From Salisapilia sapeloensis CBS 127946 (lineage: Eukaryota > Protista > Oomycota), in contig JAADVB010000008.1 of the NCBI GenBank assembly GCA_023334545.1, forward strand, positions 96,019 through 160,018: a DNA stretch of 64,000 nt, given 5' to 3'. Under the pieces are notes generated by a model. It had not been told where the DNA came from. It worked only from the letters and a program-made list of their open reading frames with translations, and ran no database searches. A program made the translations under genes and the position numbers. Shown one piece after another: positions 20,413-56,109 of this stretch (positions are counted from its first letter, which is position 1; each line of letters opens with the position of its first letter).

Positions 20413-21525
20413 ATGAGGAGCGTAAGCGTCCTCTTCCTGCTCTTTGCACTTATCATTGCAGCCGTTGTTGCCGACCCACGTGAAGTGGAGAATGAAGCGT
20501 ATGTTTTGAGTTCATTCACATCCTTTAATGCTTTATAAACAACATCCATAACCTAGCATTTGATTGCCAATAGATACATGGACTTGGACGAAGCGTCTGT
20601 CCCTGATGTAGCAATCGAGAAGCGTGTATCCATTGCACTCGAGCATAACATCGGTCCAGAAGCCTCTAGCGTGTTTTCTCCTCGAGGCTCGGTCGAAGTC
20701 CTCTTCGGATCGTCCTTGGTGAAACCCCAAGCTACTTTCAAAGACACTCCTTCCTTGTCTGAAGTTGAGCTCCAGGAATTTCAGGTATGCATGCATGATG
20801 TAACAATGGACTATGATATGCTCACGACTTTATAGTCTCTCTTGGCGAATAATGGCTATTACATGGTTCGAGCTCGTTCAGATCCGGAGGATGCCAGCTC
20901 TCATTACGTCGCTGCTTCCATCCCCATCGTATTAGCTCTTTTATGGCAGCATCTGTAGTCATCTAAATGTAGCTGTGTGTAGTGCATGCTAGCGGCCGTG
21001 AAGATGCATGAAGACTTGGCTTTCCACATGTCAGATGACGGTCAGCTCATCGGCATCGAGTTCCTCACGCCTTACATTTCTCCATCTACCTGCTCTCAAG
21101 TCCAGAAGGTATGCAAGTCACGACTTGATGTGTATCCCCTCTTAGCATTTGAGTATAGAAGGGACTGTCTACGGCGCAATTGACACCCCACGCGACCGTC
21201 TTCTTGGCTCAACCTGGAGCGAGGTAATGCTCCAAACAACATGTACTAGTATCGAGTCTAATAAGAGTATCTAGTCCTCCCAAGAATGTTGGTGCTCGAA
21301 AGGATAGCATTCCGAAAGGAGTGAAACCAGCGAAAGCGGATGGCGAGGAAGAAGCTGTGGAAGAGAACCCGTCCTTCTTCCGAAAATATGTACGTTCCTC
21401 TTGGAGTTTGTTTAGATCGAGTACTCATGTCATTATAGTGGTACATCATCCTACCAATCGTCATCTTCAGCCTCGTGGGTGGACAGGAACCACAAGCGGC
21501 TGGAGCACCAGCGGGACGACGTTAG
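20413..21525 (+). CDS. EMC10: ER membrane protein complex subunit 10 (7 exons, 260 aa)
   Basis: Exons 20413-20498, 20574-20784, 20836-20928, 20983-21108, 21159-21223, 21275-21389, 21439-21525; all introns GT-AG and the model closes in frame. Signal peptide, LEH…FSPRGSV, ASIPICML and the C-terminal SFFRKYWYIILPIVIF hallmark. Confidence 0.85.
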
Positions 21526-22129
21526 AATGGTCGTATCGAAACTTGGGTTGGAATAAAGCTACCTGCCTTTAAAGACTGAAGCTATGCTCAATCTCGAGAT
21601 TTCTATACGTAATAGTTGTATCGTTCTTTCGAAGGGTCCAGAGATCTGTCTTATATAATCTTTGCTTTTAATGTTGTGGATACTTGATACTGAATCATGA
21701 ACACTCTAGTTCCTCTCCTAGACATATAGATACAAGGTGAACTCAGAGATGGTACTAACCAGGAGCAATCATCACGCGACTACCTCGACATTCTTTTTTA
21801 TAAAAGGACTCGTTTACCCAACAGATTCTGCTTTTAGACGCTCGGAAAAGGATACTAGATGGAAGCATGAGCTAATCATCGACCTCATCGCCTTTTATGG
21901 ATGGCAGCAAAGCAAATCTTACTTTAGGATCCCTCGGATGTGTCATAGCTGAGTATGACGACATCGTGCGAGATCCAGACTGTAGCTGAAATCAAGTGAT
22001 AGCCAGATTAGCAGCACATTTCTCTTCCAGCCTTTAGTAATTTTCATCAAATGTGTATCTGCTATCAAGTGTAGATACCTCCAAAAATTGAAACGAACAC
22101 TACAAGCAAGTGACAGGAGAAATCAATTT

Positions 22130-22903
22130 TTAAATCTTTCGAGGCTGATGGTCCATTAATGACTGCGACTCTGTTTCTGGAGATAGTTCAGTTGGTGATA
22201 CGTCGCTAGTAGGATTCGACGCTTGTTGGATAGCAGATGCGCCAGTCCATTGCTGAGATAAGAGAAGCTGACCCCACACGGTGTTGTCTCCAGTGGCGAC
22301 TACAACCGCAACGAGCGATCCTTCCACTACTTTTGTCGTCATATAGATTAGGTGCGGCAGACAAAGAGCTTTGTCGGGATAATTTCCACTCGGACGACTG
22401 GACGGTGGCTCCGTCGATACTTTTTTACGCCACATATTCGAACCTCGGACACTACCTGACTCTAGCGTCAAGTCATCTCCTTCATCCGAAGTCTCCGAGG
22501 CCTCCAGTAGTTTAGACTGATCCACTATGCAGTCGTTGGATGCCTCAATGATACGCATATCAGCAGCGATAATGTCACCAGCATGCACTTCAACGACGTC
22601 GCCTACAACCAAGCTCGTGGCATCCATCCGCAATGTGCGTGTAGTCGCGTTGGATAGTCGTCGTCTTACTCTGGCTTCCCGAGGAAGAGCTTCGTTATAG
22701 TTCTGCATGGCAGGGGTCTGTGCGAGGCAGGGCAGTAGGCAGCAGAGCCAAGATGGGCACTGGAGAGGCGGAGACACGCGGTTCGCGCCATGCAGTTGCC
22801 TTCGCGCTTGGGCTTCATCACGCGTGAGTCCGCGAGCTGCGTCTACGCCAAAGCGCTGGATGAAGTTGGATAATGCCTCCTCCTCGACTTTGGTATCCAT
22901 CAT
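22130..22903 (-). CDS. Stand-alone P-type ATPase N-terminal/actuator-domain protein, 257 aa (no P, N or TM domains)
   Basis: GLTRDEAQARRQLHGANRVSPP (cation ATPase N-terminus); LVVGDVVEVHAGDIIAADMRII and IYMTTKVVEGSLVAVVVATGDNTVWGQL (A-domain). No DKTGT motif and no TM helix; the ORF ends in a polar tail and a stop. Confidence 0.75.
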   Translation of the reverse strand: MMDTKVEEEALSNFIQRFGVDAARGLTRDEAQARRQLHGANRVSPPLQCPSWLCCLLPCLAQTPAMQNYNEALPREARVRRRLSNATTRTLRMDATSLVVGDVVEVHAGDIIAADMRIIEASNDCIVDQSKLLEASETSDEGDDLTLESGSVRGSNMWRKKVSTEPPSSRPSGNYPDKALCLPHLIYMTTKVVEGSLVAVVVATGDNTVWGQLLLSQQWTGASAIQQASNPTSDVSPTELSPETESQSLMDHQPRKI

Positions 22904-52377: not shown

Positions 52378-55300
52378 ATGTCCGACCGCACGCCAGCTTC
52401 ATCAGCCGCGTCGGGTGCAAGATCACAATGGGCGAGCGAGAACAGATTGACGAGCACCGACGTGCACACGCCGAGGACGCAGTCCCAGCGCGACCTGGAT
52501 GCGCCGTCAAACTCCGATTTTTCTTACCAGAGAGCGCATACTCCTAAAGCAGACACTCCTGGTGGAATCCATTCCCCGCGCAAATCTAACTCCTCACTAC
52601 GACGCTTCTTCCCGAGCACACCTGGGAACGAAAAGCGCCATGAAGACAACCTGGGTATGTCTTACCGCCATTCGGAAGGAAACCCCAACTACGCTCTCAG
52701 CACGGAAGAAGACCGTGCTTCCCACCGAGACCGGTTTATGAGTGATGCCGAACGTACGTTGGCACGTGATCCGAGCCAAACGCGTGACTCGTTCCGTATC
52801 CTCGACGCTGATCAAGCCGAGTGGCATGACCAACCAGCTGACACGATCCTCGACTTGCTCAGCTCCGACATCAACTATGGTCTGTCTTCGGATGAAGCCT
52901 CTAAGAGACTCACCGAAAACGGCCCGAACTCTCTAGAAGCGGAGAAGAAGACTCCAACGGCTATCATTTTCCTATTACAGTTCACCAACTTGATTATTGG
53001 TCTCTTACTTGTCGCTGCCCTTGCCGCCGTGGCGCTGAAAGAGTTCGTGGAAGGTATTGCTATCATCGCGGTCGTGCTGTTGAACGCTGTCATTGCGACA
53101 GTGCAGGAGCGTAATGCGACGAACGCGCTGGAAGCGCTTCAGAAAATGTCATCGCCACAGTGTACAGTTCTGCGCGATGGTCGTCAACAGAGCATAGCGA
53201 GTGAACACCTCGTGGCCGGCGACATTGTCAATCTCACCACGGGTGACATTGTTCCGGCTGATATCCGTCTTCTTGCCAGTTCTGACTTGAAAGTAAATGA
53301 GATGATTCTTACTGGTGAGTCTGAAGACGTAATGAAGAAGTTTGATGCCGACATGAGTCATGGCTCTGGCGAAAAGCTTACGGCTCCTAATATGGTCTTC
53401 TCGTCGACGTCTGTTGCCACCGGTAACGCGACTGGTGTTGTCGTCGAAACGGGCATGTCCACCCGCGTCGGCTCCATCGCAGCGTTGCTGCGTGGCAAGT
53501 CGGCTGACGGCACGAAACAGAACCCGATCAAGCGCTTCTTTGATAAGTACCAGCCGAAGATGACTCCTCTCCAGCACACACTGCACAAATTGGGTGTTTT
53601 CATGGGTGGCGTCGTGATTGTTGTGTGCATCGTTGTGTTCGTTGTTGGTATGGTGCGTGACATTCCGGATCCCAAGAACCCTACTCGCCCTGTTTGGCTT
53701 CACATGATCATGATTTCCGTCTCGCTCGCCGTCAGTGCCGTGCCAGAAGGTCTTCCCATGGTTGTTACAATCTGCCTTTCTACCGGCACAGCCGACATGG
53801 TTAAGAAGAACGTTCTCGTGCGCAAGATTGCTGCTGTGGAATCCCTTGGTGCCAGTTCTGTCATTTGTACCGATAAGACGGGGACCTTGACGGAAGGTAA
53901 GATGCGTGCCGTTAAGATGTGGGGTGACGGCGTCGAGTACGAAATCACCGGTCGTGGCTTTGAACCGTACGGTGAAATCCTACACGACGGTGTCGCACAG
54001 GCCAAGTCCAACGCCCAAGTTCGCTCGACGCTTCTTTCCTCTGTCCTGTGCACGAACACCAGTGTGCAACAAGACAAGGATGAGAACGGAGAAACAACGT
54101 GGGTACCCATGGGCAACTCGTCTGAAGCTCCTCTTGTTGTCGCCGCTGCCAAGGCCGGTATCTGGCGCGAGGAAGTTATGGAAGCGTACCCACGTACAGC
54201 TGAAATTCCCTTCTCGTCGTCTCGTAAGATGATGATCACCGTAAACGAGTTACCGAAGGAGTCGTTTGAGCAGATGCCTCTTCCGAAGGACACTAAATAC
54301 GTTGCCAACGTGAAGGGTGCACCCAACTATATCATCAAGAATTGTACGCAGTACCTCCAAAAGGATGGTACAGTTAGCGAGATGCGCCAACGTGATGCGA
54401 ATCATGTCTTGGAAGCAGTTGACGCGCTGTCGTCCCAAGCATTGCGTGTTCTGGCTGTTGCTATGCGCCCAATGCCAAAGCTTCCGTACCCGGACGATGA
54501 AGATGACATTGAGAAGAAGTTTGAAGCGCTCAGTGAGCCGCTCATCTTCCTCGGCCTCGTGGCTTCCATTGATCCACCGCGTGAAGGTGTACGCGATGCG
54601 ATCCAGACGGCATACGACGCTTCGATCCGCACGGTCATGATCACGGGTGACTACTTGAAGACTGCAGTTGCTATCGGCAAGGACATTGGTCTGCTTGCTA
54701 TGGGTACGGATGAAGATTCGTACGCCGTGGACTGCACTGTCCTACGTCCTAATGGCGACTACATCGAAGACAGCCAGTTGGACGAGATCACTAGTCGCTG
54801 CGTCGTCTTCGCGCGTGCGAAACCGGAGGACAAGATTGAGATTGTCAAGAGTCTGCAGCGTCAAGGCATGGTTGCCGCCATGACCGGCGACGGTGTGAAC
54901 GACGCGCCTGCTTTGAAGGAGAGTGATATTGGTGTTGCCATGGGTCTTGCCGGTACTGCCGTCGCCAAGGGTGCGTCTGACATGTTGCTGACGGATGACA
55001 ACTTTTGCAGCATCGTGGCTGCTGTCGAGAAGGGTCGCGAGACGTATGAGAATATCCAGCGCTTTGTGTGCTTTTTGTTGTCGACGAACTTTGGCGAGAT
55101 CACAACGATCTTTGTCGCGATAGTCATCGGCATGGACCTGCCACTCGAGCCGCTTCAGATTCTGATCTTGAACATCTTTGCGGACGGTATGGCTGCCGTG
55201 GCGCTCAGCCTAGAAAAGGGCGACGGAACGGTCATGTCGGAGAAACCACGACCGCCGCAGCAACAAATTATCCACGGCCGACTGTGGGTCATTGTCCTCG

Positions 55301-56109
55301 TCAACGGAATGTTGATCGCGACCGGCGCCCTCACGGTCTTCATCGTCGGCATCTACTGGAACTTTGGCATGATCCTGCAGGAAGATTATATGGAGGGCAT
55401 TGACGTGGAAAGCGGAAAAAAATCCTATAGACACGCTGTGTGCCAACGGTGGTTGGGTATCAACACTGGATGGAAGGATGTGAGCAACTGCATGGCCGAG
55501 TTACCGGACGAAAACTTCCGATATAATGAAACCATTCGCGGCGAGTCGGACTTTATCGGCGAAGACTTTGAGTGCCATGGCGGAGACTACAGCTGCATCA
55601 ACGAAGGTGTGTCCCGAGCACAGACGATGACATTTATCTACATTACGATGATGGAAATGTTCCGAGCGTACACGGCGCGTAGCTTCACCAACTCGGTCTT
55701 CTACCGCATGTTCTCGAACAAGTGGATGCAGTGGGCGGCCGTCGGGTCGGTGACGCTGACACTGAGCGTGACGAACATCCCGGTGATCATGGACGACCTC
55801 TTTGGCTTTGCCTACATTGAGTGGTTCCAGTGGCTCTTTGCCATCGCCTTCTCGGTGCTCATGGTCATTGGTGGCGAGATCATGAAGGCTTGCTACCGTA
55901 TGAGTGACAAGAAGAAGTTTGTTAAACGGGAGCAGGAGCAGCACTATAACGATATGATGCTCGAGATCCGCACGCTGCGGGAGCAAGTGCAGCGCGTGGA
56001 GACGCGTCTCCAAGACGATATGACCGAGATCCGTCGCAACCACCGTCGTCAGCACTCGAACTCGACGCTGTCGAGCTCCAGCTCGGACGCAGATCACCAT
56101 CGCACCTAG
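52378..56109 (+). CDS. Type II cation-transporting P-type ATPase (SERCA/IIA-like), 1243 aa
   Basis: LTGESE, AVPEGLP, ICTDKTGTLT, KGAP, DPPR, MITGD, AMTGDGVNDAPALK. About 10 TM segments; TM5 STNFGEI and TM6 LNIFADG. Confidence 0.95.
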   Translation: MSDRTPASSAASGARSQWASENRLTSTDVHTPRTQSQRDLDAPSNSDFSYQRAHTPKADTPGGIHSPRKSNSSLRRFFPSTPGNEKRHEDNLGMSYRHSEGNPNYALSTEEDRASHRDRFMSDAERTLARDPSQTRDSFRILDADQAEWHDQPADTILDLLSSDINYGLSSDEASKRLTENGPNSLEAEKKTPTAIIFLLQFTNLIIGLLLVAALAAVALKEFVEGIAIIAVVLLNAVIATVQERNATNALEALQKMSSPQCTVLRDGRQQSIASEHLVAGDIVNLTTGDIVPADIRLLASSDLKVNEMILTGESEDVMKKFDADMSHGSGEKLTAPNMVFSSTSVATGNATGVVVETGMSTRVGSIAALLRGKSADGTKQNPIKRFFDKYQPKMTPLQHTLHKLGVFMGGVVIVVCIVVFVVGMVRDIPDPKNPTRPVWLHMIMISVSLAVSAVPEGLPMVVTICLSTGTADMVKKNVLVRKIAAVESLGASSVICTDKTGTLTEGKMRAVKMWGDGVEYEITGRGFEPYGEILHDGVAQAKSNAQVRSTLLSSVLCTNTSVQQDKDENGETTWVPMGNSSEAPLVVAAAKAGIWREEVMEAYPRTAEIPFSSSRKMMITVNELPKESFEQMPLPKDTKYVANVKGAPNYIIKNCTQYLQKDGTVSEMRQRDANHVLEAVDALSSQALRVLAVAMRPMPKLPYPDDEDDIEKKFEALSEPLIFLGLVASIDPPREGVRDAIQTAYDASIRTVMITGDYLKTAVAIGKDIGLLAMGTDEDSYAVDCTVLRPNGDYIEDSQLDEITSRCVVFARAKPEDKIEIVKSLQRQGMVAAMTGDGVNDAPALKESDIGVAMGLAGTAVAKGASDMLLTDDNFCSIVAAVEKGRETYENIQRFVCFLLSTNFGEITTIFVAIVIGMDLPLEPLQILILNIFADGMAAVALSLEKGDGTVMSEKPRPPQQQIIHGRLWVIVLVNGMLIATGALTVFIVGIYWNFGMILQEDYMEGIDVESGKKSYRHAVCQRWLGINTGWKDVSNCMAELPDENFRYNETIRGESDFIGEDFECHGGDYSCINEGVSRAQTMTFIYITMMEMFRAYTARSFTNSVFYRMFSNKWMQWAAVGSVTLTLSVTNIPVIMDDLFGFAYIEWFQWLFAIAFSVLMVIGGEIMKACYRMSDKKKFVKREQEQHYNDMMLEIRTLREQVQRVETRLQDDMTEIRRNHRRQHSNSTLSSSSSDADHHRT

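What the first reader, a model, noticed from the sequence alone, without database searches (positions are those of the whole stretch)
22130..22903. Mini-gene encoding only a P-type ATPase actuator unit, with a Cys-rich motif replacing TM1-2
Seen: the N-terminal ATPase helix (GLTRDEA…HGANRVSPP) joins the A-domain directly through CPSWLCCLLPCL (~22724-22760), where TM1-TM2 normally sit. The TGES dephosphorylation loop is eroded to KLLEASE. There is no DKTGT, and the ORF ends cleanly with no continuation visible downstream. Inference: the precise loss of the TM hairpin, replaced by a palmitoylation-like Cys cluster, looks selected rather than random decay. It could be a lipid-anchored trans-acting regulator or decoy of P-type pumps; a full type II pump lies 30 kb away.
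Basis: partly seen in the sequence, partly recalled or inferred. Interest (0 to 1): 0.7.

Follow-up and report, generated by a model that had tools for sequence, protein, structure and literature searches.

The report
Stand-alone pump actuator domain, Cys-rich anchor
This oomycete gene encodes only the "actuator" domain of an ion pump, with a short cysteine-rich greasy helix where the first two membrane helices should be; it belongs to a family kept under purifying selection in named genomes from oomycetes, diatoms, a parmalean alga and the gut protist Blastocystis, and I found no paper describing it.

Summary
ORF 22130-22903(-) encodes 257 aa, made of the P-type ATPase N-terminal segment plus a complete A-domain fold. 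TM1-TM2 is replaced by CPSWLCCLLPCL. There is no DKTG, P domain, N domain or other TM helix.

It is neither a decaying fragment nor a 5' exon.
- A convergent ECM10-like gene (Pfam PF21203) ends 557 nt downstream. The same neighbour lies next to the orthologue in six other oomycete genomes.
- Same-length homologues occur across oomycetes, diatoms, Tetraparma and Blastocystis. Many more come from unnamed metagenome contigs and marine transcriptomes, including transcripts flagged as complete ORFs.
- PxWxCCLLPC is nearly invariant in 151 family members I selected for carrying a loose form of that motif.
- The mini-proteins form one clade, apart from full-length pumps.
- dN/dS among five Phytophthora species is 0.07-0.11.

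Best reading: an ancient offshoot of a Na,K-ATPase-like pump, reduced to a free actuator domain. It is probably tethered to the cytosolic face of a membrane by the hydrophobic Cys helix. S-acylation is inferred, not tested. The catalytic Glu of TGES is not conserved, so it is not a trans-dephosphorylating enzyme. Its partner and function are unknown.

The tool that finds sequencing runs was closed, so expression at this locus is untested. An overlapping window of this scan noted the same stretch (s1-282445); it was not noted on other DNA.

The parts
22130..22903 (-). Complete CDS of the mini-protein (257 aa; stop codon at 22130-22132)
   Evidence: ORF list and sequence. Pfam PF00690 and PF00122. 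AF2 model with pLDDT 79.9 and pTM 0.76.
22739..22873 (-). N-terminal segment of the A domain (Cation_ATPase_N, residues 11-55)
   Evidence: Pfam hit, 27.1 bits. Aligns to Na,K-ATPase alpha residues 10-52. The model has helices at 11-18 and 28-38.
22724..22759 (-). Cys-rich hydrophobic helix CPSWLCCLLPCL (residues 49-60). It is homologous to the start of TM1 and replaces the TM1-TM2 hairpin.
   Evidence: Conservation among 151 motif-selected family members: P50 and W52 151/151, C54 150/151, L57 149/151, P58 149/151, C59 145/151, C49 137/151, C55 135/151. All four Cys are present in 115/151, and every substitution is hydrophobic. Predicted helix at residues 51-61.
22259..22684 (-). A-domain beta core (residues 74-215), equivalent to the TM2-TM3 cytoplasmic loop of pumps
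   Evidence: PF00122 hit. VIA-align Z 23.4, rmsd 2.0 A over 167 residues to H,K- and Na,K-ATPase; model 3-218 matches SERCA2b 1-240. Foldseek E 1e-13.
22493..22513 (-). Degenerate TGES-loop position (KLLEASE, residues 131-137)
   Evidence: Aligned to SLTGESE of Na,K-ATPase. The family columns have T 90, G 126 and E 56 or D 29 of 147; the window has L-E-A.
22427..22489 (-). Acidic, disordered insertion after the TGES-loop position (residues 139-159), found in only about 30 of the 151 aligned sequences, oomycete members among them
   Evidence: pLDDT is below 50 for residues 142-154. These columns are filled in only about 30 of 151 sequences. The insertion is visible in alignment A1.
22154..22177 (-). 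C-terminal acidic + SL[M/I] motif (ETESQSLM, residues 243-250)
   Evidence: Conserved columns: D/E at 243-245 and L249 in 103/114. Motifs such as EEQTSLIV and DEEGISLM end most oomycete and diatom members.
20416..21572 (+). Context: convergent multi-exon ECM10-like gene (Pfam PF21203) that bounds the mini-gene on its 3' side
   Evidence: tblastx with the Aphanomyces and P. ramorum neighbour genes. The same convergent neighbour follows the orthologue in six other oomycete genomes.

Best explanation
This is a real, intact gene of an ancient family. All named members come from stramenopiles. The family descends from a type II (Na,K-ATPase-like, IIC-type) P-type pump and has been reduced to a free-standing actuator (A) domain.

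Shown:
- The protein keeps both halves of the A domain: the N-terminal helices and the TM2-TM3 loop beta core.
- It lacks TM1-TM2, TM3-10, and the P and N domains, so it cannot pump or be phosphorylated.
- The family is vertically inherited and under strong purifying selection.

Inferred:
- The two halves are joined by a short helical hairpin. Its first helix, PxWxCCLLPC(L/I) followed by basic residues, derives from the membrane-surface start of TM1.
- That helix is uniformly hydrophobic. It most likely dips into the cytosolic leaflet, and its cysteines are S-acylated, which would give a monotopic anchor holding the A domain at the membrane surface.
- The catalytic Glu of TGES is not conserved in the family and is absent here. 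The protein is therefore a non-catalytic binding or regulatory module, not a trans-acting dephosphorylation factor.
- The conserved acidic + (S/A)L(I/L/M) C-terminal motif may be a sorting or docking signal.
- The partner is unknown. It could be the cytoplasmic headpiece of full-length pumps or something unrelated.
For: Domain content and fold:
- Pfam and PDB sequence matches.
- AF2 model with pLDDT 79.9.
- Foldseek E 1e-13.
- VIA-align Z 23.4, rmsd 2.0 A over 167 aa; model 3-218 matches SERCA 1-240.
- Atlas TM 0.64-0.68.

No TM helix and no DKTG.

The gene is complete:
- A convergent ECM10-like gene follows in the window and in Aphanomyces and five Phytophthora species.
- In Blastocystis a convergent EF-1alpha gene starts 77 nt downstream.
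- Fistulifera has a single-exon ORF.
- MMETSP transcripts are flagged 'type:complete'.

Family breadth:
- 26 same-length oomycete and other hits.
- 72 representatives of 50%-identity clusters score below 1e-30, nearly all 120-330 aa in a single matched stretch. Full-length pumps appear only near 1e-24 and in two stretches.
- Diatoms and Tetraparma; Blastocystis.

Single origin and vertical descent: the mini-proteins form a clade with SH-aLRT 99, and the oomycetes a clade with 98, with Aphanomyces basal.

Selection:
- dN/dS 0.065-0.11 among five Phytophthora species.
- The window copy is about as diverged as its neighbour genes: 50% identity against 49-55%.

Anchor inference:
- The motif is nearly invariant.
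- Cys substitutions are only I, V, A, L, F or W.
- 127/151 members have a basic residue at positions 61-63.
- There is no N-terminal targeting extension.
Against: - No direct evidence for S-acylation or membrane association. The 89-99% conservation of each of the four Cys is higher than is typical for redundant palmitoylation sites, and could instead reflect a metal site or a packed interface.
- No evidence at all for an interaction with pumps.
- The window protein departs from the family at two well-conserved positions: the TG-loop Gly is Glu, and P220 of the W-P motif is Thr. It also has the longest branch in the oomycete clade (0.68). Some relaxation in this lineage is not excluded.
Confidence: 0.6

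Rival explanations
1. Same conserved stand-alone A-domain protein, but the Cys cluster is a metal (Zn or Fe-S) or disulfide/oligomerisation site. The protein would then be soluble, with a role unrelated to membrane tethering.
For: Four Cys in C-x4-CC-x3-C are each 89-99% conserved, and all four are present in 115/151 members. AF2 places the segment in a reasonably confident helix-turn-helix (block pLDDT 80-85), not a disordered tail.
Against: When a Cys is replaced, the replacement is always hydrophobic (I, V, A, L, F, W) and never His, Asp or Ser. Which Cys is missing varies between clades. The whole 10-residue stretch is hydrophobic, is followed by basic residues, and is homologous to the membrane-surface start of TM1. 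No CxxC knuckle is present.
Confidence: 0.17
2. The family is functional elsewhere, but the copy in this genome is drifting towards loss of function (relaxed selection), as suggested by its eroded TG loop and lost W-P motif.
For: The window has L-E-A where the family has T/V-G-E/D, and T where 137/144 members have P220. It has the longest terminal branch among oomycete members (0.68 against 0.12-0.36).
Against: The 257-codon ORF is intact. By my hand count from the table, all positions conserved in at least 90% of members are retained except P220; G134 (126/147, about 86%) is also lost. Divergence from Phytophthora and Pythium (50%) matches that of the neighbouring ECM10-like (49%) and PSD (55%) genes, so the long branch looks genome-wide. 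The fold is predicted confidently.
Confidence: 0.1
3. The ORF is only the 5' part of a longer pump gene, or an assembly or annotation artefact.
For: Annotation pipelines label some homologues as 'magnesium-transporting ATPase' or 'Na/K-ATPase alpha'.
Against: A convergent conserved gene lies 77-170 nt downstream in seven other genomes and 557 nt downstream here. Transcriptome ORFs end with stops at the same place. A conserved C-terminal motif precedes the stop. A pump without TM1-TM2 could not function. There is no P/N-domain similarity nearby.
Confidence: 0.02

Closest known systems
A (actuator) domain of type IIC P-type ATPases (Na,K-ATPase and H,K-ATPase alpha subunits)
   Same: - It is the best sequence match (E 3e-13) and the best structural match (Z 23.4, rmsd 2.0 A).
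- The N-terminal segment, the GD-x-VPAD-x-R strands and the G-x-T-x-x-G motif are kept.
- The PP-x-x-x-P-x-W start of TM1 is recognisable (compare TPEW in the pumps).
- The closest full-length proteins are labelled Na/K-ATPase alpha by their sources.
   Different: - It is free-standing: no TM1-TM2, no TM3-10 and no P or N domains.
- The TGES Glu is not conserved.
- It has a Cys-rich hydrophobic helix and a C-terminal acidic-SL(I/M) tail that pumps lack.
- The mini-proteins form a clade separate from the pumps (SH-aLRT 99).
Small membrane regulators of P-type pumps (phospholamban, sarcolipin, FXYD proteins); comparison from general knowledge
   Same: Small, membrane-associated, non-catalytic proteins that could modulate pumps. 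This is the working analogy for the trans-regulator hypothesis.
   Different: Those are single-TM peptides unrelated in sequence to pumps, and they bind the TM domain. This protein is a pump-derived cytoplasmic domain without a TM helix. No interaction has been shown.
Soluble P-type ATPase-like proteins consisting only of P and N domains (for example archaeal MJ0968); from memory, not tested here
   Same: Also a stand-alone piece of the P-type ATPase headpiece kept as a separate gene.
   Different: It is the complementary piece (HAD-like P/N domains with the phosphorylated Asp). It is prokaryotic and has no Cys-rich anchor.
S-acylated proteins with Cys clusters beside a hydrophobic or amphipathic helix (for example IFITM3, phospholipid scramblase CCCPCC, SNAP-25); from memory
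   Same: A cluster of Cys within or next to a short hydrophobic segment, followed by basic residues, on a cytosolic protein lacking a TM span.
   Different: There is no sequence homology. Acylation of this family is untested, and its Cys positions are more strictly conserved than in typical acylation clusters.

Membership tests
Functional P-type ATPase (TC 3.A.3) | DKTGT phosphorylation motif in a P domain | tested here: not met
   No DKTG in the ORF or in any of 151 family members. No Hydrolase or Cation_ATPase Pfam hit. No P/N similarity nearby.
Functional P-type ATPase (TC 3.A.3) | Membrane domain of at least 6 TM helices, including TM1-TM2 | tested here: not met
   The PDB alignment skips chain residues 53-118. 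The Kyte-Doolittle 19-residue maximum is 1.66 against 3.13 in a real pump. The protein ends before TM3.
Functional P-type ATPase (TC 3.A.3) | A domain with a TGES dephosphorylation loop | tested here: not met
   The A-domain fold is present, but the loop reads L-L-E-A-S here. Across the family T-G is common while the Glu is variable.
Pfam E1-E2_ATPase (PF00122) + Cation_ATPase_N (PF00690) domain families | Score above Pfam gathering thresholds | tested here: met
   48.2 bits against 28.1, and 27.1 bits against 20.4.
Stand-alone A-domain family known so far only from stramenopiles (unnamed; UniProt auto-label 'P-type ATPase A domain-containing protein') | Length of about 170-330 aa with one continuous match from the N-terminal segment through the A domain, without a TM1-TM2 insert | tested here: met
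   257 aa. Aligns end to end with 26 and then 151 members. Falls inside the oomycete sub-clade (SH-aLRT 98).
Stand-alone A-domain family known so far only from stramenopiles (unnamed; UniProt auto-label 'P-type ATPase A domain-containing protein') | Junction motif P-x-W-x-C-C-L-L-P-C | tested here: met
   CPSWLCCLLPCL at residues 49-60, with all four Cys present.
Stand-alone A-domain family known so far only from stramenopiles (unnamed; UniProt auto-label 'P-type ATPase A domain-containing protein') | W/F-P motif closing the A domain, and a T/V-G loop at the TGES position | tested here: not met
   The window has W219-T220 (P in 137/144 members) and E134 (G in 126/147). These are lineage-specific departures and do not affect membership by homology.
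Stand-alone A-domain family known so far only from stramenopiles (unnamed; UniProt auto-label 'P-type ATPase A domain-containing protein') | Conserved microsynteny in oomycetes (convergent ECM10-like gene downstream) | tested here: met
   In Pythium oligandrum the PSD, eIF3j and PH-domain genes lie on the same sides of the gene as in the window.
S-acylated (palmitoylated) peripheral membrane proteins | Thioester-linked fatty acid on the Cys cluster, and membrane association | not testable with these tools
   Only indirect support: a hydrophobic Cys-rich helix, hydrophobic substitutions and flanking basic residues.

The most novel reading that the evidence does not exclude
The family could be a lipid-anchored actuator domain that works in trans. 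Held at the membrane surface by its acylated, TM1-derived helix, it would dock onto the P/N headpiece of full-length type II pumps (or another aspartyl-phosphate protein) and compete with or substitute for the resident A domain, gating the E1P/E2P cycle. That would be the first pump regulator derived from a pump domain itself, present in every major stramenopile group for which a named genome turned up (oomycete pathogens, diatoms and Blastocystis among them).
Probability: 0.15. Interest if true: 0.85.

Novelty: new variant of a known kind. Interest (0 to 1): 0.62.

Why it matters
P-type ATPases are among the best-studied membrane machines, and the A domain is understood only as an integral, tethered part of the pump. 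Here a free A domain has been kept as its own gene across lineages as distant as Blastocystis, oomycetes and diatoms. Its junction motif is nearly invariant and its dN/dS is about 0.1. That implies a function for this fold outside the pump cycle, or a previously unknown layer of pump regulation.

The family is present in major crop and animal pathogens (Phytophthora, Pythium insidiosum, Aphanomyces), in a common human gut protist (Blastocystis) and in ecologically dominant diatoms. No homologue from a named organism outside stramenopiles turned up, so it may also serve as a lineage marker.

It is directly testable with existing genetic systems in Phytophthora and Phaeodactylum-like diatoms.

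Tried and rejected
- Pseudogene or decaying fragment: rejected on conservation, dN/dS and monophyly.
- 5' exon of a larger pump: rejected on the convergent downstream genes and the complete transcripts.
- Derivation from the pump 30 kb away: rejected, since it is only 28% identical over the A domain.
- Trans-acting dephosphorylation enzyme: rejected as a family-wide function, because the TGES Glu is variable.
No RNA reads could be laid on this locus and read laying was not used.
- Literature searches for the motif, for 'P-type ATPase A domain', for truncated, soluble or stand-alone forms, and for three locus tags found nothing relevant.
- The Pythium rows of the dN/dS table are invalid and are not used. 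A stop character in the chosen segment shifted the codon threading.
- tblastx of the Phytophthora ECM10-like gene against the 282-aa gene downstream in Pythium oligandrum gave no hit, so that adjacency is not claimed for Pythium.
- Atlas feature searches gave no taxa beyond oomycetes for the family. They also pointed to 190-240-aa Bacillota clusters that I did not examine.

Full report
**1. Observation.**

The minus-strand ORF 22130-22903 encodes 257 aa.
- Pfam finds Cation_ATPase_N at residues 11-55 and E1-E2_ATPase, both above their gathering cut-offs.
- phmmer against PDB chains puts Na,K-ATPase alpha subunits first (E 3e-13), then H,K-ATPase, MgtA and, far behind, SERCA.
- That alignment comes in three pieces: query 11-53 to chain 10-52, query 65-149 to chain 119-197, and query 184-214 to chain 203-233.
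- About 66 pump residues (TM1-TM2) are therefore replaced by about 12. These include CPSWLCCLLPCL (residues 49-60, coordinates 22724-22759).
- The sequence at the TGES position is KLLEASE.
- There is no DKTG. tblastn finds no further ATPase similarity near the ORF.
- The Kyte-Doolittle 19-residue maximum is 1.66, against 3.13 for the real pump at 52378-56109.
- That pump is a complete type II ATPase, but it is only 28% identical over the A domain.

**2. The gene is complete, not a fragment.**

Downstream of the stop codon, a multi-exon ECM10-like gene (Pfam PF21203) runs convergently at about 20416-21572(+). This leaves 557 nt of intergenic DNA.

The same convergent neighbour follows the orthologue elsewhere:
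- within about 110-170 nt in Aphanomyces astaci, Phytophthora ramorum, P. nicotianae, P. rubi, P. pseudosyringae and P. kernoviae;
- in Pythium oligandrum the gene sits between PSD/eIF3j and a PH-domain gene, as in the window;
- in Blastocystis hominis a convergent EF-1alpha gene starts 77 nt after the mini-gene;
- in the diatom Fistulifera it is a single-exon 208-codon ORF.

Several homologues are MMETSP transcripts flagged as complete ORFs of 199-296 aa.

**3. A large, old family.**

- The word-index search returned 26 same-length proteins (176-267 aa). They come from Pythium, Globisporangium, Phytophthora, Hyaloperonospora, Nothophytophthora and Aphanomyces, plus unnamed sequences.
- A profile search of 1.84 billion representatives found 72 clusters below 1e-30. 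Nearly all are 120-330 aa and match in a single continuous stretch.
- Full-length pumps appear only from about 1e-24, and always in two stretches because TM1-TM2 interrupts the match.
- Further searches named diatoms (Fistulifera, Seminavis, Epithemia, a Bacillariaceae MAG), the parmalean alga Tetraparma and Blastocystis.
- Every named member is a stramenopile. The named groups lie on distant branches of stramenopiles (Blastocystis, oomycetes, diatoms/Parmales), on general knowledge of their taxonomy.

A quick maximum-likelihood tree of 41 mini-proteins and the N-terminal/A regions of nine full-length pumps gave:
- the mini-proteins on one side of a branch (SH-aLRT 99);
- oomycetes as one clade (98), with Aphanomyces basal;
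- Blastocystis near the base.

This fits a single ancient origin and vertical descent. The closest full-length proteins are labelled Na/K-ATPase alpha by their sources. They come from unrelated eukaryotes (Vermistella, Rhodosorus, Spinellus), so no recent parent pump exists.

**4. Selection.**

- Nei-Gojobori dN/dS among five Phytophthora orthologues is 0.065-0.11, with dS 0.6-1.3. The Pythium rows of that table are invalid because of a threading slip and are ignored.
- I aligned 151 mini-proteins, chosen for length 170-340 aa and for carrying a loose form of the junction motif. That choice fixes the P and W and limits the four positions after the W to a few allowed residues, so their near-invariance partly reflects the selection.
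- In that alignment, positions conserved at 90% or more include G25, N41, P46, C49, P50, W52, C54, L56, L57, P58, C59, R81, D94, G101, D102, G109, A114, D115, G195, G205 and P220.
- By my hand count from that table, the window protein keeps all of these except P220, which is Thr here. It also lacks the loop Gly (G134, 126/147).
- Its identity to Phytophthora and Pythium orthologues (50%) is similar to that of its neighbours (ECM10-like 49%, PSD 55%). Its long branch (0.68) therefore looks genome-wide rather than gene-specific.

**5. Structure.**

- AlphaFold2 with the 27-sequence alignment gives pLDDT 79.9 and pTM 0.76.
- Predicted helices are at 11-18, 28-38, 51-61 and 64-72, followed by the beta core.
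- Residues 142-154 and the tail after 222 are disordered.
- Foldseek's top hits are Na,K-, H,K-, Mg- and Ca-ATPases (E 1e-13).
- VIA-align gives Z 23.4 and rmsd 2.0 A over 167 residues. Model residues 3-218 correspond to SERCA2b residues 1-240, which by general knowledge of SERCA is the A domain.
- The Atlas search gives TM 0.64-0.68.

The protein is thus a whole A domain. Its two sequence halves are joined by a two-helix hairpin in place of TM1-TM2.

**6. The junction motif.**

- It aligns with the PP-x-x-TPEW-x-K-F start of TM1 in Na,K-type pumps. On general knowledge of pump structures, that part of TM1 lies at the membrane surface.
- In the mini-proteins it reads P-x-W-x-C-C-L-L-P-C-(L/I), usually followed by K, R or H (127/151 have at least one at positions 61-63), and then by a conserved S-M.
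- All four Cys are present in 115/151 members and three in 35/151.
- Replacements are only I, V, A, L, F or W, and the missing position differs between clades.
- That pattern argues for a lipid-facing or lipid-modified hydrophobic element rather than a metal site. In a metal site, His, Asp or Ser replacements, or strict co-retention of the ligands, would be expected.
- No N-terminal targeting extension is visible, so the protein should be cytosolic.

Hence the inference of a monotopic, probably S-acylated, membrane tether. This step is inferred, not shown.

**7. The TGES loop and the C-terminus.**

- Across the family the loop is T(90)-G(126)-[E56/D29]-x of 147. TGEE and TGED are the commonest tetrapeptides, and the named diatoms read TGEE, TGED and TAEE.
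- Other clades read TG-K/H/Q/R/S.., oomycetes V-G-D/E, Blastocystis an unrelated sequence, and the window L-E-A.
- The catalytic Glu is therefore dispensable for whatever keeps the family under selection. A trans-acting dephosphorylation role cannot be the common function.
- Most oomycete and diatom members end in an acidic run followed by (S/A)-L-(I/L/M/V). The window has ETESQSLM.
- 55/151 members fit [DE]xxx[LM][LIMV] in the last 25 residues. This resembles acidic dileucine sorting signals, a resemblance from memory that was not tested.

**8. Mechanism and rivals.**

- Most likely (0.6): a non-catalytic, membrane-tethered free A domain acting as a binding or regulatory module.
- Rival (0.17): the Cys cluster binds a metal or mediates oligomerisation, and the protein is soluble.
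- Rival (0.1): this lineage's copy is relaxing towards loss of function.
- Rival (0.02): the ORF is a misannotated 5' fragment of a longer gene.

**9. Novelty.**

Databases carry only automatic labels: 'P-type ATPase A domain-containing protein', or mislabels such as 'magnesium-transporting ATPase', 'Carbohydrate-binding protein' and 'Na/K-ATPase alpha'. Four full-text searches found no description of the motif or of a stand-alone A domain. I class it as a new variant of a known kind: a P-type ATPase derivative with a new architecture.

**10. Limits.**

- Most family members come from unnamed metagenome or transcriptome sequences. 'Stramenopile-specific' therefore rests on the named subset.
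- The tree used the quick method.
- The model's coordinates could not be inspected.
- Note s1-282445 is the same stretch read in an overlapping window.

Noticed in passing
window 20416-21572 (+): A multi-exon ECM10-like gene (Pfam PF21203) lies convergent to the mini-gene. This tail-to-tail pairing is conserved from Aphanomyces (Saprolegniales) to Phytophthora and this genome, which is unusually stable microsynteny across very divergent oomycetes.
   Followed up: partly
Atlas clusters; no locus: Several Bacillota clusters of 190-240-aa proteins carry only PF00690 + PF00122 ('P-type ATPase actuator domain-containing'). They could be split or truncated pump genes, or an independent bacterial stand-alone A-domain family. 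I did not check whether they keep TM1-TM2.
   Followed up: no
P0021 (Phytophthora kernoviae, 176 aa) against P0011 (231 aa): One P. kernoviae isolate's protein matches the family up to about residue 150 and then diverges into unrelated sequence. This looks like a frameshift, either real or from assembly or annotation.
   Followed up: no
L002 8853-9539 and L009 1-107: An HMG-box gene lies just upstream of the mini-gene in Aphanomyces astaci and within 6 kb upstream in Blastocystis hominis. This is probably coincidence.
   Followed up: no
window 52378-56109 (+): A complete 1243-aa type II P-type ATPase with all five Pfam domains. It has a long N-terminal extension of about 150 aa before Cation_ATPase_N, and it is not the parent of the mini-gene.
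   Followed up: partly
window 22427-22489 (-), residues 139-159: An acidic, low-confidence insertion directly after the TGES-loop position. It is filled in only about 30 of the 151 aligned mini-proteins, oomycete members among them; the position corresponds to the loop that contacts the P domain in pumps.
   Followed up: partly
P0010, P0027 (Phytophthora palmivora, Globisporangium polare): Family members are annotated 'Carbohydrate-binding protein' in NCBI. This is an evident annotation error that has propagated between records.
   Followed up: no
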